This document shows, in pieces, positions 14,914 to 48,458 of a stretch of DNA of 56,768 bases. A program made the translations under genes and the position numbers. The number at the start of each line of letters is the position of its first letter. Position 1 is the stretch's first letter. The notes beneath the pieces were generated by a model. That model did not search any database, was not told the origin of the DNA, and saw only the letters and a list, made by a program, of their open reading frames with translations. Source of the stretch: Ylistrum balloti (lineage: Eukaryota); contig NW_026782945.1 in assembly GCF_031769215.1 (NCBI RefSeq), forward strand, positions 1-56,768. The letters are read 5' to 3'.

Positions 14914-14916
14914 TTC

Positions 14917-22461: not shown

Positions 22462-22462
22462 T

Positions 22463-22825: not shown

Positions 22826-22839
22826 AATATATAGCGCCT

Positions 22840-24318: not shown

Positions 24319-24545
24319 GAGGTTTTACCTTTCTTTGATTTCGTAGGTTGTTTTTTAGACTCCGTCTGTGTTGACGATGCAGCCTGCGCTAGCAGCAGCA
24401 GGTCGCCTACCTGAATGGCACGTTGTGCCATTGTTGTTCGCCTAATACGTGCACCTTTCTCAGGTACCCCGCTTGGGTGATCAGGTAGTTTTACGGTAAT
24501 GCCTGCTCTTGGTACATAAGTACCTCTGAGTAATTTCTGTGGCAT
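24315..24545 (-). CDS. DUF2635/Mu gp38-like small tail protein
   Basis: VP..G..V..P......PE.G......T...R.I..GDL pattern; directly before the sheath. Confidence 0.7.
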   Translation of the reverse strand: MPQKLLRGTYVPRAGITVKLPDHPSGVPEKGARIRRTTMAQRAIQVGDLLLLAQAASSTQTESKKQPTKSKKGKTS

Positions 24546-24546
24546 G

Positions 24547-25188
24547 TTATGATTCCTCCTGTAAATTAATACTGTCCTGTGCTGCTGGCGCAGTACCTAG
24601 TGCTGGCTCCAACTGATCAGCTGGTGCAGCAGCACTATCGTAGGGCAGCGGTGTTTCGTCACTGACACCTTCGCCGCCTGGATACCAATCTGTTTGCAAT
24701 GATTCAAAATCACCAAGGGTGCTGCAATCTGGGAACTTACCGGTAAACTCATGGCTCCAGAGTGTTGACCAAAGCGCTACGCGCTTTGTGCCTACTTTTC
24801 CGTTAAAAAGATTTCGCTGATTAATGTCTTGAGCGTCATTAATATCAAGACCAAAATCTTGGCCAGCTAAATTTTTTCCAGATAAATAGATAGCTAATTG
24901 CTGAACAAGGTCAAGGGCTAAATCATCCGCATCAACACCAGCACCATGTACCGTAATTAAAAAGGCAGCAAAATCACCGCGCTGTTGTGTTGTGCCAGCG
25001 GTTGTTTGAATAATATCCGTACTAGAAAGACAAGACACAAATAGTGCTGGCGCTTTAAAGGAGCGACTTAAAGCTTGACGCAAGTCAAATCGTCCACCCC
25101 ACTTGTCAACTGTTTTTAGTGTCGTAAGCTCAGTCTTAATGCCAGCAATGGCAGCGTCACGAATTTCTCTTAAGCTAACCTGGCTCAT
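24547..25188 (-). CDS. Tail terminator-like protein (Mu gp37/DUF1834-like)
   Basis: WGGRFD, APALFVS.L, ALWS..W motifs; position. Confidence 0.7.
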   Translation of the reverse strand: MSQVSLREIRDAAIAGIKTELTTLKTVDKWGGRFDLRQALSRSFKAPALFVSCLSSTDIIQTTAGTTQQRGDFAAFLITVHGAGVDADDLALDLVQQLAIYLSGKNLAGQDFGLDINDAQDINQRNLFNGKVGTKRVALWSTLWSHEFTGKFPDCSTLGDFESLQTDWYPGGEGVSDETPLPYDSAAAPADQLEPALGTAPAAQDSINLQEES

Positions 25189-25218
25189 GTGCGTACCTCA
25201 TTCATGTGAGCGCCTCAC

Positions 25219-25668
25219 TCATGTGAGGGCCTGCTGCAATCTTAAGGTGTACCAGTCTTGTAAGACTAGCGAAATCGTATCTAATTCTTTGCTACTAACC
25301 CCCAAATACTCACGCTGCAAAATACCGCGATCTGGATCACCAAATTGATGGGTAGCTGCGTAAATAAGTGTTGAGCCTGCGCCCGCACCATCTGTGGCAA
25401 TAAAGCCTTGAATATCATCTTCAAGATCACCGCCTAGGCGTAGCAGTGTATGCTCTGGATGTTTTGGGCCATAATCTGGATCTTGCCATTCTGGCCATAA
25501 ACTACCGTCAGGTGCAGGTCCACCACTGGCAATGCGCTCACGAGCTGCTGTTTCAAGTAGGCCTGCAATTTGCCATTTAACGTTTGCGTCATCGATCTTA
25601 AGCTGTTCGACGTCACGGATTAAAGACCGTAGCTCGCGATCATCAAAAATAACAGCTGCCCCAGTCAT
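25219..25668 (-). CDS. Phage virion morphogenesis protein (Mu gpG family)
   Basis: GPAPDG..WP, LRLGGDL, GSTLIYAATHQFG, REYLG.S motifs. Start taken at ATG 25668; GTG 25743 is possible. Confidence 0.88.
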   Translation of the reverse strand: MTGAAVIFDDRELRSLIRDVEQLKIDDANVKWQIAGLLETAARERIASGGPAPDGSLWPEWQDPDYGPKHPEHTLLRLGGDLEDDIQGFIATDGAGAGSTLIYAATHQFGDPDRGILQREYLGVSSKELDTISLVLQDWYTLRLQQALT

Positions 25669-25744
25669 AAAACAGGCACCCGTAAAACTACTTGCAAGCA
25701 GATTGCAAAGACAGATAATGGTTGTTGCAAGATACGTAAACACA

Positions 25745-26173
25745 TTAAAAACCCTGTAACCTTTGACGGCCCATAACGCGCTCTTGGGCACCAACAGTGA
25801 CCGCGCCACCAACGGTAGGCGCTGGTTCGTCATGAAGCTCTGCTAGAGCTGCTTGCCCTTTGGCGATATTTTTTAAATGTTCAATGTGGTCTCTATAGGT
25901 TGCGACCATGTCCTCTGTACGTTGATCTGGACCTGTTGCCATGTAATAGATCGCCATATCGATACACATTTGTTTTAAGATCTCTGGCACAGGATTAAGA
26001 GCCTGTACCTCTTTAATGTCGTAACGTGCAGCAAGATGACTATCAATACGACTACTAGCACGCTCAAGATAAACATCTGGATCTTGCACATCGTCGCCAT
26101 AGCCAGACTGAACAATATCTAATAGATCCTGTCCAGCTTGATCAACAATATCTTGAATGGTGGCATAGGCCAT
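25745..26173 (-). CDS. Mu gp36/DUF1320 head-tail connector
   Basis: MAYAT..D, AS..IDSHL..RY, L...C.D.A.Y, L..IAKG motifs. Confidence 0.9.
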   Translation of the reverse strand: MAYATIQDIVDQAGQDLLDIVQSGYGDDVQDPDVYLERASSRIDSHLAARYDIKEVQALNPVPEILKQMCIDMAIYYMATGPDQRTEDMVATYRDHIEHLKNIAKGQAALAELHDEPAPTVGGAVTVGAQERVMGRQRLQGF

Positions 26174-26181
26174 AGAACTAC

Positions 26182-26661
26182 CTAGCCCTTACTGTCTTTT
26201 GCCAATTCAACGCCGCCAATAAGTACACGTAGTGACGTATCAGCACTTAATAGATCGCGTTGTTTTCTACTTAACTTGATGGCTCCTAGCTCATTCCAGC
26301 CATGTTGAAACTGGAGACCAGCACGACGTCGTTGTGGTGTCTCACAAAAAACACGAACTACTTGAGGTTTAGTACTGCTTGCTTTTGGCGCGTCAGTATC
26401 GGGATCTGGTTTGTCTCCCTGTTGTTCGGGCTTCTTTGTGTCTAGCTCTGTTGCTTTTGGCTCTTTTGGTGTAGCTGTCTTTTTTGGTGCTCGAGACCGC
26501 CTAGATTTACCCTGCGTGCTAGCGTTTACTTTTTTTGTTTTCGGTGTTTTAGATTTACTTTGCGTATCTGCGGTTGCCTGATCCTGCCCCGCAGGTTTTG
26601 TTCCTGTAGGCTCTTTTGTATCTGGTTCTTTTTCTTTTGATGTTTTACCTTGCTCTGTCAT
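26182..26661 (-). CDS. HI1506-like Mu protein with low-complexity N-terminus
   Basis: C-terminal RRRAGLQF...W; K/T/P-rich N-terminal part. Confidence 0.6.
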   Translation of the reverse strand: MTEQGKTSKEKEPDTKEPTGTKPAGQDQATADTQSKSKTPKTKKVNASTQGKSRRSRAPKKTATPKEPKATELDTKKPEQQGDKPDPDTDAPKASSTKPQVVRVFCETPQRRRAGLQFQHGWNELGAIKLSRKQRDLLSADTSLRVLIGGVELAKDSKG

Positions 26662-26692
26662 CTATTTTTCCTTATGTCTTTTTTTAAGATCT

Positions 26693-26720
26693 AAAACAGC
26701 CTTACCCTCAAGGGTAAGGC
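26693..26720 (-). terminator. Putative intrinsic terminator after the major capsid gene
   Basis: Minus strand GCCTTACCC-TTGA-GGGTAAGGC then TGTTTT, about 20 nt past the capsid stop. Confidence 0.6.
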
Positions 26721-26741
26721 TAGCTCTTTAGGAATGTGGTC

Positions 26742-27779
26742 TTAATTTAAGTAAGGCTCAACAAGAAGTTCTGTTGTTCCTGCGTATTTATTGGTTGCAC
26801 CATTTGCTAAACGATCAACTTCTACGACTTCTTTCGCTGCACCCTCAAGTGCTGTTGGTACAACAAGCAGTGTTGGTACAATTCCTAATGGATCACCTCC
26901 GTCTGCAGTAACAGACATCATTGCTTGACGTGCGGCCTCGTAGTTTTCTGCTGTTAGCGGTTGATTGCTAGCGTAAGCAAGCTGCCAAAACGAATACCCA
27001 ACATTAACGCGAGCATCAACACCATAAAGATATTGACGGTGCATAAAAACGTTAGGATCCGTTTCGTTAAAGAGGGCTACAAAATTGTAGTCTTTGCGGA
27101 CTTGGAAAATAAGCGGTTTTACAAATTGACTTGTATCAATGAGATACCAGTATGGACCGTTGCCGCCTGAATCAATATTAGAGACACTTTGAGAACGACC
27201 ATTTGCATCAAGTACCGGATGATCTGTGTCAAAGAAATTTTGTCCATCAAAACAAGGTTGCAAGTGGCCATTTTTTAATGCGCTAAAAACAAGTCGACCA
27301 GGATGTCTGGCTGCCGCCTGACCCATTGCTCTAGCAACGAGCGCAAACTGACCAAGCTGGTTATCTTCAAATTTATTGCGATCAATTGGAATAGTGTTTT
27401 CAAAATCTTTGTTAACAATTGAGTAGGCATGTTGCAATAGAGTTTTAATGACACGTTCACCCACCCATTCACGAAGTCCAGGTATAGCTCCAAGCCAGCT
27501 GTAATCCTCAGCGGCGGCGGTGCTTGGCACACGTTCAGCAACACGCTCCCATTGTGCTTTTACAGCTTGCAATCCCTTAAGGTAACTACCGTTAAGGTTT
27601 CGGTATACTTCTTGTAGTGTTTCAGCATTCACAACAATACCTGCTGCTAAAAAGCCAAGTAGATGTTCAATGCCAAAATCAGTTAACAGCTGAGGTGTTA
27701 GGGTTGCGCTGGCAGCAATTGCAAAATCGCCTACCAGGACAATCGCAAACGTCCATATACATAAAAAAAGCTTACTCAT
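26742..27779 (-). CDS. Major capsid protein (Mu gpT family) with N-terminal hydrophobic extension
   Basis: YSWLG.IP.LREWVGER, NK.FE.T..I.R..FED.QLG, GVDAR.NVGY.FWQLAY motifs. Confidence 0.95.
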   Translation of the reverse strand: MSKLFLCIWTFAIVLVGDFAIAASATLTPQLLTDFGIEHLLGFLAAGIVVNAETLQEVYRNLNGSYLKGLQAVKAQWERVAERVPSTAAAEDYSWLGAIPGLREWVGERVIKTLLQHAYSIVNKDFENTIPIDRNKFEDNQLGQFALVARAMGQAAARHPGRLVFSALKNGHLQPCFDGQNFFDTDHPVLDANGRSQSVSNIDSGGNGPYWYLIDTSQFVKPLIFQVRKDYNFVALFNETDPNVFMHRQYLYGVDARVNVGYSFWQLAYASNQPLTAENYEAARQAMMSVTADGGDPLGIVPTLLVVPTALEGAAKEVVEVDRLANGATNKYAGTTELLVEPYLN

Positions 27780-27838
27780 GTTTTTTCTCTCCTACGTGGA
27801 TCATTAATCGTCGTTTTCTTCGTCACTTCATTTATTGT

Positions 27839-28264
27839 TTACAGCTGCACGCCAGGGTAAATTTTTACCCAAACGCGGTTACCATCAACACCGGTAACCA
27901 CACCAGCAACAGGTCGCGCGTTACTGTTATGGGTTTTAGCTACGCTCTGATTGTCAACGACATAGCAGAAGCTACCGATATCAGCGGCTACAATTTCATC
28001 TGCGCCTGTACTGTTTTCAAACAGAAATTCACCGCTAACAATATCTGTATCAACACTACCTGCGGTACCGTCTTGGTTATCGTAGGCTTGATTAGACATG
28101 CCAAGTGGCTTTAGGGCTGCTGTTTCGCTACCCATAACCGCATGACCATTTGCATCAAGCATGGCAATAGTGCCTGCGGGTACTTTAATATTTGATAGCG
28201 GCACGCTATAGCGCGCTCCTAGCGCTCGCTGCTGTGTTCCTCTGTCTAAAGTTGTGGCTGGCAT
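27839..28264 (-). CDS. Head decoration/cement-like protein
   Basis: GEFLF.NS..ADEI..ADIG..CYVVDNQ.VAKT motif; lies between I and T. Confidence 0.7.
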   Translation of the reverse strand: MPATTLDRGTQQRALGARYSVPLSNIKVPAGTIAMLDANGHAVMGSETAALKPLGMSNQAYDNQDGTAGSVDTDIVSGEFLFENSTGADEIVAADIGSFCYVVDNQSVAKTHNSNARPVAGVVTGVDGNRVWVKIYPGVQL

Positions 28265-28295
28265 ATACGTATCCTTTTAGCTAATTAATCTTGTT

Positions 28296-28841
28296 TTAAG
28301 CGTTTCGTTTGTTAATATCTTCAACGCTCTTTTGGTATTCTTCTGGTGTTAAATCAAACATTTGACGCATTTCGTTCTGTGCACTGTTTAGAGATAGGCT
28401 TCCTGCTTCAGGATCTGGAACCTTTGCCTCTGGTGCGATTTCGGGTGTTGCATCAAAAAGCGCTGGCAACTGTTTAATAACAGCGTGATTAAGATCTAAA
28501 ACAGTTCCAGATTCATCACGATTCATTGCCATGTCTTCGTACTGCTTACGTGTTGCAGGTGTAATCTTCTTCTGCTCGACAGCATCATCGAGTATTTTTG
28601 TTAGCTCAGCTGTTTGCTGACCTAGCTTTTCCCGCTGAAGCTCTTCCTTAACTTCATTAAGTTCTAGCGTTAAGGCTGCACTTTTTTTCTGTTCGTCTTT
28701 AAGGTGTGAAACAGGTACATGATTTAAGTCAAGTGTTGTTTCTTGAGTACGACTGTTTTTGAGTTCACTGATTGCAGCAACAGCATCAGCAGGTGTTGCG
28801 TCAGCATTTAGTGATAACGCTGCTAAAATTTCAGGATCCAT
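28296..28841 (-). CDS. Internal scaffold protein (Mu gpZ-like) from an in-frame start inside I
   Basis: GAGGAG RBS then ATG (MDPEILAAL) at 28841; unaffected by the upstream frameshift. Confidence 0.65.
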   Translation of the reverse strand: MDPEILAALSLNADATPADAVAAISELKNSRTQETTLDLNHVPVSHLKDEQKKSAALTLELNEVKEELQREKLGQQTAELTKILDDAVEQKKITPATRKQYEDMAMNRDESGTVLDLNHAVIKQLPALFDATPEIAPEAKVPDPEAGSLSLNSAQNEMRQMFDLTPEEYQKSVEDINKRNA

Positions 28842-29341
28842 GCAAGACTCCTCATTGTTTAATTGGTTTAAGATTGCGCTATTGAGCGCCATATTTGGTA
28901 AGTTTGGAGCATTTGTTAGAGCAACAGAATGCAAGGATCGTACACGTCCAAGACGGTCACGACGAAACACAGGACTTAAAAAACGGTATTCACGTTCTTG
29001 GACAGAACGCTTACCAGCTTCATTAAGTGCTAGTCGTCCTTCGACAGCACCCTCAGATGTAACACGCACTTCTTCAATCCAGCCACGAGCTGGAGATTAT
29101 CTTCACCTTTATTACCCTTAAGTACAGTTGCGTGGTTAACGTCTAGAGGGATTGCTTGTTCAAACGCCTGCTTAACAGCTTGCGGTGTTGGGTTACTAAA
29201 CCGTCTCCCGTCTTGGCCACTAAAATTACCTGCGGGCACAAGAGTATGCCAGCGCTCATTTTCTGATGCTGTTACTTCAAAATTAAGCGATAGTGATACG
29301 GTATCGTATTCTAGTGCTGTTTCTGGCTGTGGTTTTGTCAT
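28296..29341 (-). pseudogene. Mu gpI-like prohead protease/scaffold, split by a 1-nt frameshift near 29095
   Basis: The 5' ORF has PAG.F.GQDGR and PLDVNH. The other frame has PARGWI, YRFLSPVF and SVALTN.PNL. The span is 1046 nt, one base short of a codon multiple. Confidence 0.85.
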
Positions 29342-29370
29342 ACCACCATCGTCCCACGGGATATGGACGA

Positions 29371-29399
29371 TTTATAGTGCAAGGTTGCACTATTTTAGT
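29371..29399 (-). promoter_or_regulatory. Dyad motif copy 1 upstream of the I/head operon (candidate Mor/C-type activator site)
   Basis: TTTATAGTGCAAGGTTGCACTATTTTAGT; 27/29 identical to 40842-40870; contains the ATAGTGCAA-NN-TTGCACTAT inverted repeat. Confidence 0.7.
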
Positions 29400-29646
29400 A
29401 GCTAGGTGTGACGGTAGAAAAATAGACCTAAGTCACCATGCCAGTCGTATGGTATTTCGTCAATTTAGGTGCATTTTTGCTAAAAAAGAGAGAATTGAAT
29501 GAGGGGCGGTTTTAAATGTTGTTGCATGTACGTTGCAAATCCCCTGCATCCATTGCAAGATTTTTAAAACTATCGTTGCCTAGGTTTAAAAAGATATGGC
29601 GTTTAAGGGCAGATTTGGGCGCTAATCACTAAAAATAAGTCGTTAG

Positions 29647-31377
29647 CTAATTTTCTATCCTAAAAAGTTTATCATTTTGAGATAAGCGAAGAACAATATT
29701 TTGTTGATTGTTTAATGTATCAGGTAACTTATCTTGAAGAATTGACGTAATAAATTGAATACCAACCTGATCAACATATTGGCCAATTTTAATTAGTTGA
29801 TTATCATGCATCAATTCTTTTTTATCAGTCAACAGGAAATGCATACAGGGGATTGTATTTTCATCAGCATAAAGGATATATGCAATATCAAAACAAGAGA
29901 CTTCACCTTGTTTTTTGCCTGAACTAAAGTTCAAACTAAAAACTCTAAACCGATAAATATTTCGTTTAGATTTTTTATGCTCAACTATATCCCAAGTTAA
30001 ACCATATTCTTCTCCATAAAGTTTTCTCGAGACTTCAGAAAAACATGTATTAAATTTGTTGATTTTCACCTCTAACTCTTTTTTAAATGAATCAGAGAAA
30101 AAGTAATCATCTATCCCATCTAAGTCTTTAGACAAACGCTCAATCTCATCATCAACCTCTATAATCTGTTTTAACTTTTGCTCTAATTCTCCTCTAATCT
30201 TATGCTTTTCGTTCAATTCAGAAATAATACTCTCTAGTTCTTCAAAAGCATCACCTTTAGTCATCCAATGCCGTAAACGTATTTCCTCTTTCTTAAGCTT
30301 ATCTACAGAACGATAGAGATCACTTATCTGAGTTTCAAGCTCTGGTAATTCTTTGGAAATAAAATCATATTGGTTTTTTAACATATCATTATGATAGGTT
30401 TGAAGATCAGAAAATGTCTTTTGCAACTCTGGAAAAAAACCTTGGGCTTGCTGGTATATTAGACGTAGCTTATTAATGTCTACCTGGCTATGCTGTTCTT
30501 TTAAATCATGTTGTGATTCAAAAATTAGCTCTCGCCATAACTCTTTCTGTGCAATTTGGGAAGACAACATATTTACTTCATAGTTAATCTCACTAATTCT
30601 AGTAATTGCCGTTTCACGATCTTTTGTTAAGCTAAGGCTTTGCTTTCGAGATAACAGTTTATTAATTTTGTTGTTATTAAGGGCAATAGCCGCCTGATAT
30701 GTCTGCCGTGTCTCACTTGATTCAAGCCGTAATTTAAAGCTCTTTTCTAGACTTAGCTGTTGCAAAAAATTCTGCCTAAGTTCGGACTTGTCATTTGGAA
30801 AGCCAAGCATAAACATATGTAGCGTTTCATATTCCACATCTGAAGTAAATACATCTAAGAACTTCAAAGTTGAAGCAAGGCTATGGTCATCGTATCTGAT
30901 ATTGTGACCAATAATTTGTTTAAATGTAGGTTTTTTTCCGTAGTGGCCAGGAAGTAAGATATCTGACAAAGCTTCTTCATATTTTTTATCTGTTAGATCT
31001 ACACCATCAATACGTTGAATTTTTTGATTTCTTTGCAAAAAGTTTCTTTGTATTTCTATCTCTCTAGAGCTTTCTTTATTTAAATCCTCTTTTAGCTTGA
31101 GAGAAACAGTTACATTTCGTGCTGGCTCCTGCAAAAAATCTTGAACACGTTTATAAACCCGCTTAGAATTCTCTGGATCTGTATATAGCTTTTTTTTATC
31201 ACCGCCAAGGCAAAAATGTATCAGCTTTAAAACTGTTGTTTTGCCAACATTATTGCCTGTTTCAGTACCTGTTTCAGTTAATGTTTCATCTACAATCAGA
31301 TTAAGACCAGAGACAAAGTTGATTTCACGAATCAGCTCACCATTGCCCGTTTCTATAGTCAGTGACTTTAAGAACAT
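29647..31377 (-). CDS. ABC-3C/Lamassu SMC-like ABC ATPase (DUF2326-type, LmuB-like)
   Basis: Walker A GNNVGKTT, long central coiled coil, signature FSSGKKQG, Walker B FLLTD, H-loop MHD. Confidence 0.85.
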   Translation of the reverse strand: MFLKSLTIETGNGELIREINFVSGLNLIVDETLTETGTETGNNVGKTTVLKLIHFCLGGDKKKLYTDPENSKRVYKRVQDFLQEPARNVTVSLKLKEDLNKESSREIEIQRNFLQRNQKIQRIDGVDLTDKKYEEALSDILLPGHYGKKPTFKQIIGHNIRYDDHSLASTLKFLDVFTSDVEYETLHMFMLGFPNDKSELRQNFLQQLSLEKSFKLRLESSETRQTYQAAIALNNNKINKLLSRKQSLSLTKDRETAITRISEINYEVNMLSSQIAQKELWRELIFESQHDLKEQHSQVDINKLRLIYQQAQGFFPELQKTFSDLQTYHNDMLKNQYDFISKELPELETQISDLYRSVDKLKKEEIRLRHWMTKGDAFEELESIISELNEKHKIRGELEQKLKQIIEVDDEIERLSKDLDGIDDYFFSDSFKKELEVKINKFNTCFSEVSRKLYGEEYGLTWDIVEHKKSKRNIYRFRVFSLNFSSGKKQGEVSCFDIAYILYADENTIPCMHFLLTDKKELMHDNQLIKIGQYVDQVGIQFITSILQDKLPDTLNNQQNIVLRLSQNDKLFRIEN

Positions 31378-31595
31378 AAGGTTACTTTTTGGTCTGAGCC
31401 ACAGATAGCAGTATCTATTAGAAACAACCAGTCAAGACATAATAAAAATAAATTAATAGACATTTTTTTAATACTGTTGACTCTTATATATAGCTCGTTA
31501 AGCTCCAAATTGTCTTCTTTTAGCAAAACTTCTAACAATATTGAGCTATTGTAATAAACACTATTTTCTGGATGGATATTATCAGGAATCAACAT
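31368..31595 (-). CDS. ABC-3C middle component (LmuC-like)
   Basis: 75 aa from ATG 31595 (MLIPDNIHPENSVYY...LCLDWLFLID); overlaps both neighbours. Confidence 0.8.
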   Translation of the reverse strand: MLIPDNIHPENSVYYNSSILLEVLLKEDNLELNELYIRVNSIKKMSINLFLLCLDWLFLIDTAICGSDQKVTLCS

Positions 31596-32550
31596 CTGCT
31601 TTTGGTGGCTTTTTAAAAATTTTACATCTAAGGAATGTGTCAACTACCAGTATCGCAGCACATAACCGAACTTCCTCTTCAGCAAGATCTATAACTTCAT
31701 TACGAGACGCAACATACGAAACAATGCCATCAATAGTATTTAAAAAACGTTTACTAGAAGTCAAGCTAGAGTCCGTGCTTAAATAATTATTCCGAATTTG
31801 TTCAATTACGGAAAGACTTTTATTATCACCAGCACTATCAAACTCATTATAGATAGCCTTAATACGTACTACTTGTAGACTATGCTCTTTTATTAATTCT
31901 CCAATATCGTCAAGCTCATTGTAATCAATTTTATCTTGAATTTGAATGGGTAGCACTTCTAAATTAGAAGAATCTATATTTAGGTCGTTCTGTGCCAATA
32001 TTTTAATAATTTTTGTAAGATTTGAAGGTAATCTATTTATAGAAGTAAAGGCACTAGGGCACTCTCTTTTAAAAAAACTAACTACCTTTTCTTGCCCCTC
32101 AATAGTCAAAGCTAAGATTGCTTTTTGTAATGAGGTAATGTCCAAAATATCTTTATTGAGATCAAATGGAACAGAATTGCTATTTTTAAGGTTTTGCAAC
32201 TTCTTTAAGTCAACAGCCTTAGATATTGACATAAATATAAATCTATATTGTCGGTATGATTCTGGAACTTTACTCAGCGACTCCTCAAGCTTAGATTTAG
32301 TATTCGTTGAAGAAACTTGAACCATGATTTTATTATCATCATCAATTAAGTCTATTCCAGGAACATTTTGTTGATCTACATTTAAATTTTTAAGACTATA
32401 CCCATATATAAGATTTAGCAATTCACAATAAAAGTATTCGGAAAAAACGTTTAGATCAAAAATACCCGCCCCAGCTCGAATTTCGACCTCACTGGCCAGA
32501 ATGCTAAAAACCCTACTAACTACAACTGAATTTTCTTGTCTTTGTTCCAT
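31582..32550 (-). CDS. ABC-3C/Lamassu effector (LmuA-like): SMEK-type N-terminal domain plus ABC-3C C-terminal domain
   Basis: DLNVFSE....LLNLIYGY.L.NLN...N.PGIDL.D....I.VQVS at the N-terminus; KIDYN...LVVDTF.RCKIF..P at the C-terminus. Confidence 0.8.
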   Translation of the reverse strand: MEQRQENSVVVSRVFSILASEVEIRAGAGIFDLNVFSEYFYCELLNLIYGYSLKNLNVDQQNVPGIDLIDDDNKIMVQVSSTNTKSKLEESLSKVPESYRQYRFIFMSISKAVDLKKLQNLKNSNSVPFDLNKDILDITSLQKAILALTIEGQEKVVSFFKRECPSAFTSINRLPSNLTKIIKILAQNDLNIDSSNLEVLPIQIQDKIDYNELDDIGELIKEHSLQVVRIKAIYNEFDSAGDNKSLSVIEQIRNNYLSTDSSLTSSKRFLNTIDGIVSYVASRNEVIDLAEEEVRLCAAILVVDTFLRCKIFKKPPKADVDS

Positions 32551-32664
32551 TAATATTTATACCCCTGCTTAAACATTACGTCGGCAATTGCAAGTCATTA
32601 TTAACGCCACAGACACCCGCCAGGCGAAAAAAATCAGCGTTGCTTTTTTTGTAGAACAAGATTT

Positions 32665-33858
32665 TTACCCTAGAACATTATTCGCAAAACCATCCAACAC
32701 TTCTCCGTCGCGAACACGCTTCTTTACGTTACCAGGATCCGTTTTTTCAAACAGCCTTAACGATGCTTGACCTTCCTCGATATTAGCCGAAACCATAACC
32801 ACCTCATCATCAACCTTACGAAAAAAGAATGCATGTCTATTTACTCTTACCAGTAAATCTGAATTGCTAAATACTTCCATAACACCTAAAAGCGGTAAGC
32901 CATCTTGAATAATACTGCTGGCGGCATGATGTTCTGTTAGCTGTATCATTGATTCTTTTAAGCCTAACGCTTTCTGCGACTTTTCAGTTAACACAGCTAC
33001 TGGAATACGTCCATTGCCGTTTCGCTTAGCTAGCTTTAGGAACGTATTTACATAACCACTGTCATGTAAATCCTGTATTGCAGTTCTTCTGGCCTGAGCT
33101 GGCAATGCCTCGATACGACCCGACAATGCATCTGTAACAAATCGTTTACGCGTTAGTCCAGGGTTTGTGTGCCAGCCTGGATCTACACCCACTGGAACAC
33201 GTACCTCTTCGCCTGTACGACGATTAACAACTGTTCTGTTTTTTAACCGAGGTTTACTCGGTTTTAAACCCATAGCCTTAAGCTGCCTGTCGCTAACTTG
33301 CGTAACTCTGCATTTACAACCATGGCCATTTGGTGGGAACAGGCGCTTCCAGATTGGATCATCGACATGAGCCACAAGAGGTCTTTCTGCCCATTTAACA
33401 TGTTGCTCTCGATGATTTTCACTAGGACCTAAACGGTAAACAAACCAAGGTCTTGTCTCTTTTGTACGCTGCGAGCGCTCATATTGGCCAGCAGCTCTAG
33501 CACTGCGAATATTGGCACGATAAATGGTTTTTAAACGACGTGGACTACCTAATTCTGCAAGTTGCTTTCGTCCTGTTATTGGATCTGTAACTTGCCTAAC
33601 ACCGTACCAGCCTTTCTTTTCTAATAGCGGCTGCAAGCCCTTTTGAAATTGTCTTAGGGTTTGACCTTCTTTAATTGCTACCCGTAGCGCACCTCGAATA
33701 TCTTCTAAAACATCAAAGCCTACTGTTTTAGCAACCGTAAAGGCATGATGATGCTCTTCTGCAAAGACATCTAGATAACTAAAAGATGGCTTAAGTTGTT
33801 TATTACGTAAAAACTGTAATGCATCTTTTGGGACTGGCGGTGTAAACGGTCTTGGCAT
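32665..33858 (-). CDS. Mu gpF (gp30) minor head protein with C-terminal extension
   Basis: HHAFTVAK, LQP.L..KGW.G, GSPRRLKTIYRAN, HREQH, PPNGHGC.C.V motifs; about 130 extra C-terminal residues. Confidence 0.9.
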   Translation of the reverse strand: MPRPFTPPVPKDALQFLRNKQLKPSFSYLDVFAEEHHHAFTVAKTVGFDVLEDIRGALRVAIKEGQTLRQFQKGLQPLLEKKGWYGVRQVTDPITGRKQLAELGSPRRLKTIYRANIRSARAAGQYERSQRTKETRPWFVYRLGPSENHREQHVKWAERPLVAHVDDPIWKRLFPPNGHGCKCRVTQVSDRQLKAMGLKPSKPRLKNRTVVNRRTGEEVRVPVGVDPGWHTNPGLTRKRFVTDALSGRIEALPAQARRTAIQDLHDSGYVNTFLKLAKRNGNGRIPVAVLTEKSQKALGLKESMIQLTEHHAASSIIQDGLPLLGVMEVFSNSDLLVRVNRHAFFFRKVDDEVVMVSANIEEGQASLRLFEKTDPGNVKKRVRDGEVLDGFANNVLG

Positions 33859-33860
33859 TA

Positions 33861-35465
33861 CTAGCCACTATCGCGCACATCACCAACGCTACGCGCCGCG
33901 AGCATTGCGCTTGCTAGTTCTTTAGCTAATGGATTTATATCTAGATCTAATTCAAGTAGTGCTGTTTCTAGCTCTTCAAGGTTTTGAGCATTAGCAATCA
34001 CTTCTTTTATGGGATCAAGAATAGGATCCATCTGTTCTTGCCAATCAGACAGTCCCATCTCTTCTAATTCTTCGTCTAGCGTTGCTTGTTGTTCTGGATT
34101 ACCGCTATCAATGGCTGCATTGTTAGCACCTGCAAGTAATGCCTCTATGTTTTCTAATCGTTGATTAATGGCTAATGTCGTCTCCGTTGGTGCAGGGGCG
34201 GCTTGTGCTACGGGTGCTTTTACTTCGGGGGTTAGTAGTTCGTCGTCAGCCTCTGGTGCTTCTAAGCCAAATTTCTCATTGAGTTGTCGTTACGATACTT
34301 TAAAACCGCGATCAATCATTGGACCGACTGCTTGACTAAACGTCTTGATATCTTCAGGATCACGAACCGGTAGCAAAATCTCTGGATAATTTTCCTGTGG
34401 TCCATAATTAATATCAATATATGGCCTGATTAAATCACGATTCAAGGTAGCTGCAAGCTGTTTTGCGTCGCTACGCTTAATCTCTATTCTGATGTCATCA
34501 TGGACTTTTGCTTGACCTAGACTACTACCATCATCAGTAGTCATAGTCTGACCAAGTACAGTTTTACTAATTTGTTTATCGCAGTAGGTAGCTAAACGCT
34601 CAAACACATCTGCTGCTGCTTGGCCACCAACAGCTTCTAAAAGCTCAATCTCCATTGACTTATGAATAACCGCACCAGCATCACTACCTAAACTATGAAT
34701 TGCTTCAATTAAGGTCTGAATATCATCTTCACTAGCACCTTGACCATAACGACCAATCTTAATCGGGATACCAAAGACTTCTGCAAACGCTAGCCAGTCT
34801 TTGATGGTATAGTTTTGAAAGAGGTAATACCACGCAGCAGGCAATGCTAGCCCGCCACGAATCGGATGACCGCATTTTAGCTTAGGAATATGACAAATAA
34901 ACTTATAGGCTGGCAGCTCCAAACCCTGAACTAAATCTGCCTCATCACGAATACGTAATTCGTTTTTACGTTCAGGATGAAACATAAAAGAGCGTGGATC
35001 ACGTCTTTCATACGTAGGCCACCATTTAGATCTACTAGACTCCCAGACAAGCTCAACAAGAGCATAACCTTTACCAAAGGCATCTAATAAATTATCGAGC
35101 ATTGGCTCAAACTCAGGGCCAGAAGCCAATCGTTCTACATCTTCAGCAATAGCTAAGCTTTTTGCATCATCGCCGCCAGGCTGCACAATTGGTTCAATAC
35201 CCGTTACTGCAACACGTCGCATGCTTAAAACACTACGGTAATGGGGATATCGTTCCTCCATTTCTTCTGCTAGTGTTAAGTAATCGCGGGTATTATTGGT
35301 GCTTGTTGCTTCTCGTAAAATACGAGTTAATCTAGCTGGTGTCAGTCCAGACGCTATAGCGTCCTGCCAAAAACTACGTACCCCTAAATGACTAGGCTGT
35401 GCAATTTTTTGTTTTAGCAGTTCTTTTTTAATGGGTTGATTGCGATAGTCATACAACATTACCAT
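33861..35465 (-). pseudogene. Portal protein (Mu gp29/DUF935 family) interrupted by an in-frame TAA at 34290-34292
   Basis: F.E.FG.P..IG.YG..A and ISK.VLGQTMTTD motifs. The same frame stays open after the TAA (RQLNEKFGLEAP...) and joins ORF 33861-34058, for 534 aa if read through. Confidence 0.88.
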
Positions 35466-35480
35466 ATTGTCTAAGCTCCT

Positions 35481-37079
35481 TTAATACGCACCACGCAGGC
35501 TACCAATTCCGCTTTTACCTCTGCGTACTTGCCTGTGGCTGCGGTCTTGGTGATTTGGACGCATCCAATCGCGTGCGCTGTCTTGATGCAAGCTATGATG
35601 CTCGTATACTTCTATTTCTAAAGAGGTGGAATAACTTAAAAGCGCCAAAGCAATCGCGCTATCACCATGACGAAGTCCGCCGTCAGCACCACGAAACCTA
35701 GCATCACTGGGTATACTGGTAACACCTTTGTCTGTTTTAAGTAGTCGTAAATCTTTTAAAATATCGCTATCTTGTGGTAGCTCAATTGTCGCATCACTAA
35801 AACGAGCTAAAAACGGTGGCATGTTTTCTTGGTACCACTTAGGCGTTAGCATCACCTGTTCAACACGATTATGATCAAACTGATCTGCGGCCTCTTCTGC
35901 AATCTGGCTACCATTACCACGGGCATCAAAAGCTGCTTTTACAAAACGAGGTAGCCGTTCTAAAACAAACTCAATAACCTGGTATTGCTGTCTAAAAGGT
36001 ATGGTTCTGAGTTCAATGATCAGCGGTACAGTTAATACAAGATCACGTCGCATCTCCCCAATTGCAAGCACTGTTAAGTCTCCCGTACGTCCAAAGTCTT
36101 CACCTAGATAATGATCTAAACGTGGGCTGAGACGTGCTAGTATTGGCTCGACTTGCAAGGCTAGCCATTCTTGGATTTCTTGACGACGGACAGGCTCTGG
36201 TAATAACTTCCAATCATCTGGCCTTGAAAACCGTAAAACAGGTGCTGACTGCATACGTGCTTCAATAAGTGCTCGCGATAATGCCGCACCACCTGATTGC
36301 GATGGAATACAAAATAGCTCTTCGTCTGCACCAGAACCATAAAAATCAATAATTTCTTGCCGCCAAGCTTCTTGTGCTTTAGGTGACCAATCTCGACCGG
36401 TTACCTGAAAGATACGCTTACAGAGTCCTTGATCAATTGCGTCATCGAGTGTTACGCGGTGAAGCCTGTAAGGTTTTCTGCCTTCTTTAACATCGTTGAT
36501 TAAGTCATTAAACGGATTATCAACACCATTATGAGTTGAGATAATAGCAACACAGCCACCCCACATTAAAAAAGCCATAGCTGCCTTAATAACTTCTTCG
36601 GGATTATCATGGAAAGCGGCCTCATCAAAGCAGAACCTACCTTGTTTACTACGCAGGTTTCTCGCATGTCCAGATAATGCTTCAACAACATGGCCGCTAT
36701 CAAAGTTAACCTTAAAGACATGAGAGCTTTTATCTTCGTCGCCATCTTTCCAGACTTCTTCATATTCTGAGACATTAGAGACTGCAGCATTGTAGATACC
36801 AGCCCAAAACACGGCATCACGAATATACTGCTGTGTCATATCTTTGTTATAGGCCATGTAATAACAATTCATACCGCCTGCAGTTTTGTTTTTCATGGCC
36901 ACAAAGGTTGCCTTAGCAGCATCTACCCAGCTAATACCTGTACGACGCGATTTTTCCATAATGTCGACTTGCGAGGTGCTAGAAAACCATCTTTTTTGAT
37001 AATCCAAAAGCAGAGATTTTGGATCGTAGTTATCTAAATAACCTTTAGGTAGGTTTTTAAGATCGAGGGGCTTGTTCAT
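35481..37079 (-). CDS. Large terminase subunit (Mu gp28 family)
   Basis: EKSRRTGISW (Walker A), FDEAAFH (Walker B), ISTHNG, G.DFGRTGD, HGD...ALAL. Confidence 0.95.
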   Translation of the reverse strand: MNKPLDLKNLPKGYLDNYDPKSLLLDYQKRWFSSTSQVDIMEKSRRTGISWVDAAKATFVAMKNKTAGGMNCYYMAYNKDMTQQYIRDAVFWAGIYNAAVSNVSEYEEVWKDGDEDKSSHVFKVNFDSGHVVEALSGHARNLRSKQGRFCFDEAAFHDNPEEVIKAAMAFLMWGGCVAIISTHNGVDNPFNDLINDVKEGRKPYRLHRVTLDDAIDQGLCKRIFQVTGRDWSPKAQEAWRQEIIDFYGSGADEELFCIPSQSGGAALSRALIEARMQSAPVLRFSRPDDWKLLPEPVRRQEIQEWLALQVEPILARLSPRLDHYLGEDFGRTGDLTVLAIGEMRRDLVLTVPLIIELRTIPFRQQYQVIEFVLERLPRFVKAAFDARGNGSQIAEEAADQFDHNRVEQVMLTPKWYQENMPPFLARFSDATIELPQDSDILKDLRLLKTDKGVTSIPSDARFRGADGGLRHGDSAIALALLSYSTSLEIEVYEHHSLHQDSARDWMRPNHQDRSHRQVRRGKSGIGSLRGAY

Positions 37080-37869
37080 TAAAAAGCCTCTCGCAGAATC
37101 AAGACTTGTTTTAATTTATTTTTCTTACCGTTGCCACGATTACCAATACCCATAGGTGTCGCAACTTCAATAAACTGGCAGCCCTGATACAGCTCCCGAA
37201 TAAATGGATCATCGTCGTAACTCACAATAAAGCTACCCTGCAATCTTAAAACAGCATCCCTTAAACAAACATGTTCTTCTTTGCTAAAAGCATAGTCGTA
37301 TTGCAGACCTTTTATATAGGGCGGATCAAGAAAAAAAACGCGCCATCATAGTCATATTTCTTTAAAACCTCTTGCCAAGGTAAGTTTTCAATTGTTACAC
37401 GATCAAATCGCCCGTATACGCGACGCAGTACTTTTTGTTTTTCCTGCCTAGAGCTACAACCTTGTTTTTTGCTGATGCCAAAATGACTGCCTTGCCCACC
37501 AAAAGACATCTGGTTACATAAATAAAAACGGGCAGCTTGTTGAATATCTGTTAAACCAGGACGCTCTAGATACTCTAAAAATTCTTGACGACTATGGGGT
37601 ACTAGATCTATTTCATCTATGAGGGCTTCGTAATGATATTTCAAACATCTAAAAAAGGTAACCAGATGATTATTGATGTCGTTATAGATTTCAACTTTTG
37701 AAGGTTCTTTTTTAATTAAGACAGACGCACCGCCACCAAATACTTCTACATAGGTACGGTGTTCTGGTATCAGAGAGGCTATCTGTTTAAATAGTAATGC
37801 CTTGCCACCTGGCCACCGAATGGGTGAACGCAGTGTTTTCATGTTTGGCAGTTTATGTTTTGTCATCAC
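37079..37869 (-). pseudogene. DNA adenine methyltransferase (Dam/D12 family), frameshifted at a T8 tract
   Basis: W.GGK, YVEVFGGGASV, EIYND.N in the annotated frame. LDPPY and SYDD are in the -1 frame after T8 (37331-37338), whose TAA overlaps the terminase ATG (TAATG). Confidence 0.88.
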
Positions 37870-38414
37870 GCCGCCACTGCAATGTTTAATACGTCACGCT
37901 CAACGATCGCTGCTGTTTCTTCGTCAATGCCTGCCTTCTTGAGGCGTTTACCAATCTTGACAGCAGCAGCTTCTGCGCGTGCACGAAGCTCTTGTTTAAA
38001 CTTAAGATCTGTAACGCTTGCTCTTGTAATGTCAGCAACCGCGCGTGTGATTTTAGTAATCTCTGATGTTTTTAAGTCTTTATTCTGAGCGCCGCGAATA
38101 AGCTTTAAAATCTTATCTTGAGTTAGACGTACCAATGCTTGATTTACTTGACCCTCATCATCTGGACAAGCTTCACTTAAATAGCGTGCAAACTCTGTCG
38201 ATTCGCGTACACTCTCTAGAAAATCTTTATACTTTTTTGCAGCCGCACCAACAGCACTGCGGCTAACGTTAAGCTCAATACCTGCTTCCTCAATCCACTG
38301 ATTTAATAAAACTGAAATATCGTCATAATTACTAAAATTACGACGTTTAAATTCTTCACGTAACTTTTCTTGTATCTCTTCTGGAAGCTGTGAGATTTTA
38401 CTGCGATCTGTCAT
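37866..38414 (-). CDS. Small terminase subunit (Mu gp27/DUF3486 family)
   Basis: SKI.QLP, VSRSAVG motifs; position before the large terminase. Confidence 0.85.
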   Translation of the reverse strand: MTDRSKISQLPEEIQEKLREEFKRRNFSNYDDISVLLNQWIEEAGIELNVSRSAVGAAAKKYKDFLESVRESTEFARYLSEACPDDEGQVNQALVRLTQDKILKLIRGAQNKDLKTSEITKITRAVADITRASVTDLKFKQELRARAEAAAVKIGKRLKKAGIDEETAAIVERDVLNIAVAA

Positions 38415-38707: not shown

Positions 38708-38751
38708 ACCCCTGATCCATTTGCTTGCGACAGACGTAACTTACCCAATTC

Positions 38752-40808: not shown

Positions 40809-40841
40809 CCTAGTATTTAGGATGACAAGAAAAATGTGCAG

Positions 40842-40870
40842 TTTATAGTGCAAAATTGCACTATTTTAGT
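40842..40870 (-). promoter_or_regulatory. Dyad motif copy 2 upstream of the lysis operon (candidate Mor/C-type activator site)
   Basis: TTTATAGTGCAAAATTGCACTATTTTAGT, directly after the Mor-family stop codon. Confidence 0.7.
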
Positions 40871-48447: not shown

Positions 48448-48458
48448 TACTGCATTTG

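What the first reader, a model, noticed from the sequence alone, without database searches (positions are those of the whole stretch)
29647..32550. Complete ABC-3C/Lamassu-type anti-phage cassette inserted in the F-I slot of a Mu-like prophage
Seen: three overlapping, co-oriented, visibly AT-richer genes (SMEK-type effector with ABC-3C CTD, 75-aa middle component, 576-aa SMC-like ATPase) between the gpF and gpI genes, with no visible lesion. Established: this architecture matches ABC three-component/Lamassu defence systems, and the region just upstream of the I protease is the accessory slot holding anti-CRISPR genes in Mu-like Pseudomonas phages. Inference: the same hotspot here carries defence instead of anti-defence, and replicative transposition could mobilise it. 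The effector's GIDL...VQVS...K pattern resembles a PD-(D/E)xK-like nuclease site.
Basis: partly seen in the sequence, partly recalled or inferred. Interest (0 to 1): 0.78.

Follow-up and report, generated by a model that had tools for sequence, protein, structure and literature searches.

The report
Lamassu-type defence cassette in Mu-like prophage
A Mu-like prophage carries, between its head genes F and I, an intact three-gene Lamassu/ABC-3C-type cassette (nuclease effector, small middle protein, SMC-like ATPase) of an already catalogued subtype, so it is a tidy example of a phage carrying a likely anti-phage system, not a new kind of system.

Summary
Three co-oriented minus-strand genes overlap by 14 and 10 nt. 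They are 31582-32550 (322 aa, SMEK_N + CTD10), 31368-31595 (75 aa, MC6) and 29647-31377 (576 aa, DUF2326/YydD-like SMC-fold ATPase). They sit between Mu F (32665-33858) and the Mu I protease (28296-29341). Their GC is 0.32, against 0.41±0.03 for every other window of the same size.

Every homologue checked has the same operon, in chromosomes, an ICE and a few viral contigs. The effector's N-terminal domain is homologous to the solved 'Mrr' (SMEK) nuclease domain of a short-Argonaute partner. The literature equates ABC-3C with type II Lamassu and lists SMEK among short-Lamassu effectors.

In 68 distant Mu-like relatives the F-I gap is usually empty (median about 270 bp). Seven carry other low-GC cargo, and one of these is a PADLOC candidate system (PDC-M53). 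None carries this cassette.

So it is horizontally acquired cargo in a variable slot and a new member of a known kind. Anti-phage activity is inferred, not shown. Two prophage head genes are broken as the sequence stands: the portal has one stop and the I protease has one frameshift.

The parts
31582..32550 (-). Effector (LmuA-like), 322 aa. N-terminal SMEK/Mrr-like PD-(D/E)xK-fold nuclease domain (about aa 12-145) and C-terminal ABC-3C CTD10 (about aa 176-313).
   Evidence: Pfam SMEK_N 1.1e-38 and CTD10 1.7e-23. NCBIfam SMEK_N 3e-29. PDB 26bh Mrr domain 2.6e-12 with the single sequence and 4.2e-25 with a profile. AF2 model pLDDT 86, with restriction-endonuclease fold matches. Invariant E38, D67, D70, Q78, K87 and K94 are retained.
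31368..31595 (-). Middle component (LmuC-like), 75 aa, MC6 family. Overlaps the effector by 14 nt and the ATPase by 10 nt.
   Evidence: Pfam MC6 5e-20. ATG at 31595 and 75-aa reading. 75-aa MC6 genes with identical overlaps in homologous operons.
29647..31377 (-). SMC-like ABC ATPase (LmuB-like; DUF2326/YydD family), 576 aa. Walker A at aa 41-47, coiled coil about aa 180-455, signature motif at aa 485-490, deviant Walker B at aa 513-518 followed by K-K-E.
   Evidence: Pfam DUF2326 9.4e-19 and AAA_23. PADLOC PDC-M68B 1.4e-32 and LmuB 4.4e-13. More than 5180 homologous clusters, best 52-53% identity over full length. The AF2 model matches YydD (1e-9), SMC/Rad50 heads and solved LmuB chains. Motif positions.
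32551..32664 (-). 114-bp spacer between the F stop and the effector start. No sigma-70-like promoter or terminator was found by the scan.
29342..29646 (-). 305-bp spacer between the ATPase stop and the I start. Similar in size to the whole F-I gap of relatives, so it is probably the ancestral intergenic region upstream of I.
   Evidence: GC 0.40.
32665..33858 (-). Mu F-like minor head protein, 397 aa. Upstream neighbour of the cassette.
   Evidence: Pfam Phage_Mu_F 7.5e-13. phrog_220 1.7e-77.
28296..29341 (-). Mu I-like head protease/scaffold gene, downstream neighbour of the cassette. Interrupted by one frameshift relative to the single ORFs of relatives.
   Evidence: Pfam Mu-like_Pro and phrog_328 matches on two pieces in different frames. 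Span length is not a multiple of 3. Relatives have single ORFs of 323-376 aa.
33861..35465 (-). Mu-type portal gene, interrupted by one in-frame stop.
   Evidence: Pfam Portal_Mu 9.9e-96. phrog_113 matches on both pieces. One internal stop counted. Relatives have single ORFs of 515-543 aa.
10673..49305 (-). Mu-like myovirus-type prophage; the bounds given are those of its outermost recognised genes. Contents: HTH repressor 48784-49305 (+), MuA 45183-47318, MuB 44275-45186, Gam 43315-43845, GemA 41866-42348, Mor 40870-41241, SLT lysis enzyme 40272-40853, gp27 37866-38414, large terminase 35481-37079, major head T 26742-27779, gp36, G-like 25219-25833, gp37, and sheath 22840-24318.
   Evidence: Exact ends are not established: one TG...CA pair with a 5-bp repeat was found, which is about what chance gives.

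Best explanation
The region is an intact three-gene ABC-3C / type II (short) Lamassu-type cassette of the SMEK-CTD10 / MC6 / DUF2326 subtype. It was acquired horizontally and sits as cargo in the intergenic junction just upstream of the head protease gene I of a Mu-like prophage.

The likely mechanism is inferred by analogy with solved Lamassu complexes; none of it is shown here. A dimer of the SMC-like ATPase, together with the MC6 protein, holds a single effector molecule inactive through its CTD10 domain. When the complex meets DNA ends or replication intermediates of an invading phage or plasmid, ATP-dependent remodelling releases the effector. The effector then oligomerises through its C-terminal domain. 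Its SMEK (Mrr-like PD-(D/E)xK) nuclease domain cuts DNA without discrimination, which aborts the infection.

Carried by a prophage, the cassette would protect the lysogen, and so the prophage, against competing elements.

Shown here: the identity, completeness and conservation of the three genes; the nuclease homology; the SMC fold; the foreign composition; and the variable occupancy of the slot. Inferred: complex formation, the trigger, nuclease activity, expression and protection.
For: All three ABC-3C component families match above Pfam cut-offs. The ATPase matches PADLOC PDC-M68B and LmuB models. The operon's order, gene sizes and 14-nt/10-nt overlaps are the same in homologues from unrelated contexts: a chromosomal island, an ICE with TraH/TraF, and housekeeping neighbourhoods. 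The same holds in 8 viral contigs.

The ATPase keeps the invariant Walker A, signature and Walker B-region residues of its family. Its model has an SMC architecture. The best match is B. subtilis YydD (1e-9), with matches to solved LmuB chains 9uxh_F, 9ux7_A, 9hqx_B and 9nyg_B (9e-5 to 2e-3).

The effector's SMEK domain is homologous to PDB 26bh (4.2e-25) and keeps all family-invariant polar residues. The fold search gives EcoT38I and other restriction endonucleases, plus YydB of the YydD-YydB model.

Literature: type II Lamassu is the same as ABC-3C, and the A1B2C1 sequestration, DNA-end sensing and LmuA tetramer mechanism has been described (10.1101/2025.06.23.660979; 10.1101/2025.04.02.646746). 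SMEK is listed as a short-Lamassu effector. The SMEK domain is treated as a nuclease in short-pAgo systems (PMC10810196).

Cargo status: GC is 0.322 against 0.414±0.025. None of 68 relatives with both F and I holds the cassette, and their F-I gap has a median of about 270 bp against 3323 bp here.
Against: No experiment on this subtype was found in the held library, so protection is an extrapolation from Cap4-, Mrr-, lipase- and other Lamassu types.

The ATPase profile finds no solved LmuB by sequence at E<=1. Fold similarity to LmuB is no better than to other SMC heads. The best PADLOC model is a candidate system (PDC-M68B), not LmuB.

The Walker B region reads hhhhD-K. The short-Lamassu pattern quoted in the literature is hhhhD[Q/S/T/E].

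The scan found no promoter in the 114-bp upstream spacer, so expression in the lysogen is unknown.

The GC3 difference from phage genes is small. All phage relatives are distant (35-54% identity in F), so the timing of the gain cannot be judged.

The ATPase model has only moderate confidence (pLDDT 67).
Confidence: 0.78

Rival explanations
1. The cassette is a silent passenger in a decaying, defective prophage. It looks intact only because it arrived recently, and it confers nothing on the host.
For: The portal (one stop) and the I protease (one frameshift) are interrupted as the sequence stands. No promoter-like site lies in the upstream spacer. The D12 methylase ORF covers only part of its profile.
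Against: All three cassette genes are full length. Every family-invariant residue and the translationally coupled overlaps are preserved, while two neighbouring phage genes are broken. That pattern suggests selection on the cassette rather than neutral decay. The breaks could also be assembly errors.
Confidence: 0.12
2. The system's main targets are plasmids or other mobile elements rather than phages, as reported for the DdmABC Lamassu of Vibrio cholerae. It would then serve competition between elements.
For: Type II Lamassu (DdmABC) acts on both plasmids and phages and is triggered by palindromic DNA or DNA ends. One homologous operon lies on an ICE beside conjugation genes.
Against: Nothing in the sequence discriminates between targets. 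This is a variant of the main explanation rather than an alternative to it.
Confidence: 0.2
3. It is an ABC-3C system that lies outside Lamassu proper. This would be a separate YydD/DUF2326 clade with its own trigger and activation logic, so the Lamassu mechanism does not transfer.
For: The best PADLOC hit is PDC-M68B, not LmuB. There is no sequence-level match to solved LmuB chains. The closest structure is YydD, not LmuB. The Walker B region is hhhhD-K-K-E. CTD10 and MC6 differ from the CTD7/MC3 and CTD12 of the solved systems.
Against: A PADLOC LmuB model still aligns over nearly the whole protein (residues 1-491, 4.4e-13). The literature treats ABC-3C as the Lamassu superfamily and names SMEK among short-Lamassu effectors. 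The three-part architecture is the same.
Confidence: 0.25
4. The genes serve the phage's own life cycle, for example DNA handling during transposition or packaging, rather than conflict.
For: They are co-oriented with the late head genes, with no terminator predicted between them. An SMC-like ATPase plus a nuclease could in principle process DNA.
Against: The cassette is absent from all 68 relatives with the same head-gene order. It is present as a stand-alone operon in non-phage contexts. It is rare in viral contigs, 8 of 2.9 million. Its composition is foreign.
Confidence: 0.03

Closest known systems
Type II / short Lamassu (LmuA-LmuC-LmuB; DdmABC of Vibrio cholerae; Salmonella and Bacillus systems with solved structures)
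   Same: Three-gene order of effector, small middle protein and SMC-like ATPase of about 600 aa. The effector is an N-terminal enzyme domain plus a C-terminal docking domain. Walker A is canonical and Walker B deviant. The fold matches LmuB chains and a PADLOC LmuB model hits. SMEK is named as a short-Lamassu effector.
   Different: The effector is SMEK/Mrr-like, not Cap4. The docking domain and middle protein are CTD10 and MC6, not CTD7/MC3 or CTD12. There is no sequence-level match to solved LmuBs. The Walker B aspartate is followed by K. No experimental data were found for this subtype.
Bacillus subtilis YydB-YydC-YydD (DUF2326 family; integrative model PDB 9a6c)
   Same: The ATPase is in the same Pfam family (DUF2326), and source annotations call homologues 'YydD (DUF2326 family)'. 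YydD is the best structural match for the ATPase (1e-9). The effector model also matches YydB over 148 columns, which supports an effector-ATPase complex.
   Different: YydB is longer (481 aa) and shares only about 16% identity over the aligned part, so its enzymatic head is probably different. Its function is uncharacterised in the papers I could search.
SMEK/Mrr-APAZ partner of short prokaryotic Argonautes (Kordia jejudonensis; PDB 26bh)
   Same: The nuclease domains are homologous (4.2e-25) and share conserved E, D, Q and K positions. This domain class acts as a DNA-cutting effector that is switched on by a sensor (PMC10810196).
   Different: There the sensor is a guide-loaded Argonaute joined through an APAZ domain. 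Here it is an SMC-like ATPase joined through CTD10 and MC6.
Anti-CRISPR / accessory region upstream of the protease-scaffold gene in Pseudomonas Mu-like phages (RGP G)
   Same: The position is immediately upstream of the I-type protease/scaffold gene, it carries low-GC, horizontally acquired cargo, and its occupancy varies (PMC3993853; PMC4378225; survey).
   Different: Those phages are siphoviruses, with a G homologue on the upstream side and small anti-defence genes as cargo. Here the upstream gene is F, the G-like gene lies elsewhere, and the cargo is a 2.9-kb defence-type operon.
Defence hotspots of P2-like phages and P4-like satellites
   Same: These are prophage loci with interchangeable anti-phage cargo. 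Lamassu-family systems have been reported there (statement in 10.1101/2022.05.11.491447; PMC9122126 listed).
   Different: The phage family and slot are different. Occupancy here is low: 7 of 68 relatives carry cargo, and only one of those matches a defence model.

Membership tests
ABC-3C (ABC three-component system) | ABC/SMC-like ATPase with a coiled-coil insert | tested here: met
   Pfam DUF2326 and AAA_23. Walker A, signature and Walker B-region motifs are invariant in the family. The model has a long helical coiled coil between two head halves, with SMC-head fold matches.
ABC-3C (ABC three-component system) | Small middle-component gene between effector and ATPase | tested here: met
   Pfam MC6 5e-20 against a cut-off of 27.2 bits. 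75 aa, overlapping both neighbours.
ABC-3C (ABC three-component system) | Effector with an ABC-3C C-terminal domain fused to a variable enzymatic head | tested here: met
   CTD10 1.7e-23 and SMEK_N 1.1e-38. All 74 homologues found share this architecture.
ABC-3C (ABC three-component system) | The three genes form one conserved operon across unrelated genomes | tested here: met
   Same order, sizes and overlaps in L013-L017 and in 8 viral contigs.
Lamassu (type II, short form) | LmuB: SMC-like ATPase of about 600 aa recognised by LmuB models | tested here: inconclusive
   576 aa. PADLOC LmuB PDLC03859 4.4e-13 over residues 1-491, but PDC-M68B scores better at 1.4e-32. Fold matches to LmuB chains at 9e-5 to 2e-3 are no better than to other SMC heads. 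No sequence match to solved LmuBs at E<=1.
Lamassu (type II, short form) | Walker A Gx4GK[S/T] and Walker B hhhhD[Q/S/T/E], as quoted in 10.1101/2025.04.02.646746 | tested here: inconclusive
   Walker A is met (aa 41-47). The Walker B aspartate is followed by K, then K and E, invariant in 26 family members. It is therefore deviant, but not in the quoted way.
Lamassu (type II, short form) | SMEK-type LmuA is among the recognised effectors | tested here: met
   [quoted passage not shown] The effector here is SMEK_N.
Lamassu (type II, short form) | Called as Lamassu by DefenseFinder models | not testable with these tools
Lamassu (type II, short form) | Protection against phage that depends on the ATPase, the middle protein and the effector | not testable with these tools
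No paper on a SMEK-type system was found in the held library.
PADLOC candidate system PDC-M68 | All components match PDC-M68 models | tested here: inconclusive
   Only the B component matches (1.4e-32). The effector instead hits Aga_REase-PNTD models, and the middle protein hits nothing.
PD-(D/E)xK (Mrr/SMEK-type) nuclease domain | Homology to a solved member and retention of the conserved acidic, polar and lysine positions | tested here: met
   PDB 26bh 4.2e-25. E38, D67, D70, Q78, K87 and K94 are invariant in 27-34 sequences. Restriction-endonuclease fold matches have probability 0.89-0.99 but weak E-values. Catalysis itself was not tested.
Mu-like transposable prophage | Mu-type transposition, regulation and morphogenesis gene set in Mu order | tested here: met
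   MuA (DDE_2, HTH_Tnp_Mu_2, Mu-transpos_C), MuB, Gam, GemA, Mor, gp27, Portal_Mu, F, I, gpT, gp36, gp37, G-like and sheath.
Mu-like transposable prophage | TG...CA termini flanked by a 5-bp target duplication | tested here: inconclusive
   One candidate pair was found, about the number expected by chance. The terminal 25 nt match at 13 of 25 positions.
Phage accessory (cargo) hotspot | The same junction is variably occupied by unrelated, compositionally foreign genes in related phages | tested here: met
   Of 68 relatives, 61 have gaps of 408 bp or less. Seven carry 638-2615 bp of cargo with GC lower than the whole locus by 0.01-0.12 (0.07 or more in the five largest inserts). One is PDC-M53A+B and the rest have no family match. 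All these relatives are distant (35-54% identity in F).

The most novel reading that the evidence does not exclude
The junction immediately upstream of the head protease gene may be a general, two-way 'arms locus' of Mu-like transposable phages. Because it lies at a boundary between late-gene blocks, it can hold either anti-defence cargo (anti-CRISPRs in Pseudomonas phages) or whole defence operons (this Lamassu-type cassette; PDC-M53 in another relative). A further possibility follows from the prophage's own genes. It encodes the DNA-end-binding protein Gam (43315-43845), and this could make a DNA-end-sensing system tolerable to a phage whose own replication and packaging generate DNA ends.
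Probability: 0.25. Interest if true: 0.55.

Novelty: new member of a known kind. Interest (0 to 1): 0.35.

Why it matters
The cassette adds a clean, complete example of the SMEK-effector branch of Lamassu/ABC-3C. That branch is catalogued but, as far as the searchable literature shows, has not been studied. The cassette is also carried by a class of phage (Mu-like, transposable) in which the corresponding slot is known for anti-CRISPR genes rather than for defence systems.

Together with the PDC-M53 cargo found in a relative, this suggests the slot upstream of the protease gene could be mined for both defence and counter-defence genes. It does not reveal a new mechanism. Defence systems in prophage hotspots, Lamassu among them, are already an established theme.

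Tried and rejected
**Searches for close relatives.** I wanted a relative with an empty slot or with the same cassette.
- Megablast of 24000-38000 and tblastn of the ATPase against the phage collection found nothing.
- Exact-protein look-ups of the ATPase, F and a host permease found nothing on record.
- F-based scans of genome, metagenome and viral contigs gave only 35-54% identical relatives.
- The insertion therefore could not be dated or bracketed.

**Host identification.** A periplasmic binding protein gave at best 31% identity. That choice spent the last protein search, and the taxon remains unknown.

**Insertion and expression signals.**
- No flanking direct or inverted repeats mark an insertion mechanism; only short matches at chance level were found.
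- The promoter/terminator scan of 29000-33000 gave counts no higher than shuffles, and nothing in the upstream spacer.

**Structure-based comparisons.**
- Single-sequence and profile searches of the ATPase against PDB sequences found no LmuB or SMC. Only the fold search showed the relationship.

**Prophage ends.** A search for terminal inverted repeats printed nothing. The TG...CA plus duplication search gave one candidate, which is the number expected by chance.

**Literature.** Searches for YydD/YydB and for the original ABC-3C paper returned nothing usable.

**Rejected reading.** A role in the phage life cycle is rejected (see the rival explanations).


Full report
**Observation**

The ORF list shows three minus-strand reading frames at 31582-32550 (322 aa), 31368-31643 and 29647-31377 (576 aa).

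The middle frame, read from the ATG at 31595, gives 75 aa. It overlaps the end of the first gene by 14 nt and the start of the third by 10 nt. Gene calls for homologous operons elsewhere show the same sizes and overlaps.

The block has GC 0.322. The 476 other windows of the same length have a mean of 0.414, sd 0.025 and a minimum of 0.365. The contrast is weaker at third codon positions: 0.23-0.29 against 0.29-0.33 for phage genes. Part of the AT-richness therefore reflects amino-acid composition.

**What the genes are**

Pfam gives the following matches, all far above the curated cut-offs:
- first protein: SMEK_N (1.1e-38) plus CTD10 (1.7e-23);
- middle protein: MC6 (5e-20);
- third protein: DUF2326 (9.4e-19), with a weaker AAA_23 match.

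NCBIfam confirms SMEK_N.

PADLOC matches the ATPase to the candidate model PDC-M68B (1.4e-32) and, more weakly but over almost its whole length, to an LmuB model (4.4e-13). The effector's N-terminal half matches an Argonaute-associated restriction-endonuclease model (1.2e-27).

CTD10 and MC6 are, by their Pfam names, components of the ABC three-component (ABC-3C) systems.

**ATPase**

The protein database holds more than 5180 homologous clusters at E<=1e-5. The best are only 52-53% identical but align over the full length. They are annotated 'DUF2326' or 'YydD (DUF2326 family)' and come from many bacterial phyla and one archaeon.

In alignments of 17 and 26 sequences, 134-136 columns are invariant and the window's protein keeps them all. 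These columns include:
- Walker A at residues 41-47;
- an ABC signature-like motif at residues 485-490;
- a Walker B strand ending in D518, followed by invariant K-K-E.

The AlphaFold model has moderate confidence (pLDDT 67). It shows two head halves separated by about 270 residues of long helices.

Its best fold match is B. subtilis YydD in the integrative YydD-YydB model (9a6c_A, 1e-9). Next come Smc, condensin, cohesin, Smc5/6 and Rad50 heads. Four independently solved Lamassu LmuB chains also match, at 9e-5 to 2e-3.

By sequence alone, no solved LmuB or SMC is detected.

**Effector**

All 74 homologues found share the SMEK_N + CTD10 architecture. NCBI names some of them 'ABC-three component system protein'.

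The window's protein keeps every invariant residue, including E38, D67, D70, Q78, K87 and K94 in the N-terminal domain.

That domain is homologous to PDB 26bh, 'the Mrr domain from Kordia jejudonensis Mrr-APAZ pAgo'. The E-value is 2.6e-12 with the single sequence and 4.2e-25 with the family profile, and the same polar positions are aligned.

[quoted passage not shown] It cites DNA cleavage by a SMEK-APAZ/pAgo pair (PMC10810196).

The AlphaFold model (pLDDT 86) gives weak E-values but high-probability matches to restriction endonucleases (EcoT38I, R.BspD6I, MspJI). It also matches YydB of the YydD-YydB model over 148 columns.

Catalysis is not tested.

**Conservation of the operon and its contexts**

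Three ATPase homologues, looked up on their contigs, each sit in the same three-gene operon. The surroundings are unrelated:
- beside efflux and two-component genes;
- on an element with TraH/TraF conjugation genes;
- among housekeeping genes.

Only 8 of 2.9 million IMG/VR contigs hold a relative of the ATPase, and all 8 have the effector upstream.

One of these (L008/L103) is notable. The cassette lies convergent on a Mu-type portal-F-G block, with lanthipeptide genes on the other side. This is a second, independent association with Mu-like head genes, though there the rest of the head module is missing.

**The surroundings in the window**

The cassette lies in a Mu-like myovirus-type prophage. 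The recognised genes are:
- HTH repressor;
- MuA (DDE_2, Mu DNA-binding and C-terminal domains) and MuB;
- Gam, GemA and Mor;
- an SLT lysis enzyme;
- gp27, large terminase, Mu portal and F;
- [the cassette];
- I protease, a virion protein, major head protein T, gp36, a G-like morphogenesis protein, gp37 and sheath.

Host genes flank the prophage: surE, glycosyltransferases and tRNA-Pro on one side, and a cobalamin riboswitch with an ABC importer on the other.

The exact ends were not established.

Two head genes are interrupted as the sequence stands. The portal has one in-frame stop, and the I protease/scaffold gene has one frameshift. Relatives have single ORFs for both. Whether these are real decay or assembly errors cannot be told from one sequence.

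**Is the slot a cargo slot?**

Using an alignment of F proteins, I fetched 80 relatives from IMG/VR (35-54% identity in F) and located F and I in each.
- In 68 loci with both genes, the distance from the F stop to the I start has a median of about 270 bp.
- In 61 of them it is 408 bp or less.
- Seven carry 638-2615 bp of extra DNA.
- In the window the distance is 3323 bp, the largest seen.

The extra DNA in the seven loci has lower GC than the whole locus by 0.01-0.12, and by 0.07 or more in the five largest inserts.

Its ORFs have no Pfam match. The one exception is a locus (L050) whose two genes match both components of the PADLOC candidate system PDC-M53 (3.6e-36 and 4.3e-42).

None of these loci, nor the 11 relatives from the other scans, holds the ABC-3C cassette. 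The junction is an occasional cargo site.

The 305-bp spacer left between the cassette and I is about the size of the whole gap in relatives. It probably represents the ancestral intergenic region.

[quoted passage not shown] In the present phage group the G-like gene is downstream of T. The analogy is therefore positional (immediately upstream of I), not an identity of both flanks.

From my own knowledge, not tested here: in phage Mu a late promoter lies upstream of gene I. This would make the junction a boundary between transcription units and could explain why it tolerates insertions.

**Mechanism**

Nothing here tests function. The best-supported account is by analogy.

The literature equates type II Lamassu with ABC-3C and describes the following steps (10.1101/2025.06.23.660979; 10.1101/2025.04.02.646746):
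- an LmuA1-LmuB2-LmuC1 complex holds the effector as an inactive monomer on the coiled coil through its C-terminal domain;
- the complex senses DNA ends;
- it then releases LmuA, which forms an active tetramer.

Defence in tested family members needs the ATPase, LmuC and the effector, and it acts by abortive infection (10.1101/2022.05.11.491447). SMEK is named among short-Lamassu effectors.

I therefore infer a DNA-end-triggered release of the SMEK nuclease. Three reservations apply:
- the docking modules differ (CTD10/MC6, against CTD7/MC3 and CTD12);
- the Walker B region differs from the quoted short-Lamassu pattern;
- PADLOC's best model is a candidate system rather than LmuB.

**Expression and mobility**

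The scan found no sigma-70-like promoter in the 114-bp upstream spacer and no terminator on the coding strand between F and I. Promoter counts in the region equal those in shuffles.

The cassette may therefore be read through from the late head genes, or it may use a promoter the scan does not recognise. Expression in the lysogen is open.

The interrupted portal and protease genes, however, argue that this copy may no longer form particles. I make no proposal to test this.

**Novelty and score**

Every part belongs to described families. The subtype (SMEK, MC6, DUF2326) is common in genomes and is listed in the Lamassu literature. Lamassu-family systems in prophage hotspots are already reported.

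What is new is modest. A defence-type operon occupies the slot upstream of the protease in a Mu-like prophage, and a second relative carries a different candidate system there. This suggests that the slot, known for anti-CRISPRs, can also carry defence systems.

I rate it a new member of a known kind, interest 0.35.

While thinking about the prophage ends I began to recall the left-end sequence of phage Mu from memory.

Noticed in passing
window 33861-35465 and 28296-29341: Two head-morphogenesis genes of the prophage are interrupted as the sequence stands. The portal has one in-frame stop and the I protease/scaffold gene has one frameshift. Relatives have single ORFs for both. This could be real decay or assembly error.
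   Followed up: partly
L050:8866-10475 (IMG/VR UViG 2597489935_000001): A distant relative carries both components of the PADLOC candidate defence system PDC-M53 in the same F-I junction (3.6e-36 and 4.3e-42), plus a 163-aa ORF with no match. The insert GC is 0.42 against 0.50 for the locus.
   Followed up: partly
L008:6831-13120 (= L103; IMG/VR UViG 3300042261_002215): The same SMEK/MC6/DUF2326 cassette (ATPase 44-46% identical) lies convergent on a Mu-type portal-F-G block. An HTH gene sits between them, and lanthipeptide synthetase and M16 peptidase genes lie on the far side. The I and T genes were not found there.
   Followed up: partly
L027, L031, L033, L076 (F-I gaps): Four further relatives carry 1.3-1.9 kb of lower-GC cargo in the F-I gap. 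Their ORFs of 172-342 aa have no Pfam or PADLOC match, so they are unexplored candidates for defence or counter-defence genes.
   Followed up: partly
window 43315-43845: The prophage encodes a Mu Gam-like DNA-end-binding protein (9.7e-19). This is a curious companion for a system whose relatives sense DNA ends.
   Followed up: no
window 37312-37869: The D12-class adenine methyltransferase ORF of 185 aa covers only positions 1-180 of the 253-position profile. A 233-bp gap follows before the terminase gene. It is possibly truncated.
   Followed up: no
window 47315-47761: The ORF next to MuA has a weak, sub-threshold match to the Lar restriction-alleviation family (5.7e-4, 20.5 bits against a cut-off of 28.6).
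   Followed up: no
window 50696-50900 and 50989-55228: A cobalamin riboswitch (109 bits) lies upstream of a BtuC/Fec-type ABC importer operon in the host flank. The substrate-binding protein has no relative above 31% identity among 5.8 billion proteins.
   Followed up: partly
window 9663-9739: tRNA-Pro (GGG) lies about 0.9 kb outside the tail end of the prophage. The candidate TG...CA ends with a 5-bp repeat (10668 / 49739) are no more than chance would give.
   Followed up: partly
whole window: The lineage is poorly sampled. No phage, cassette or host protein tested has a relative above about 54% identity in any collection searched, and none of the three proteins looked up exactly is on record.
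   Followed up: partly
window 29342-29646 and 32551-32664: Short TGCAA(C/T)-type motifs recur in both spacers that flank the cassette. They were not tested for enrichment and could be regulator sites of the late genes.
   Followed up: no
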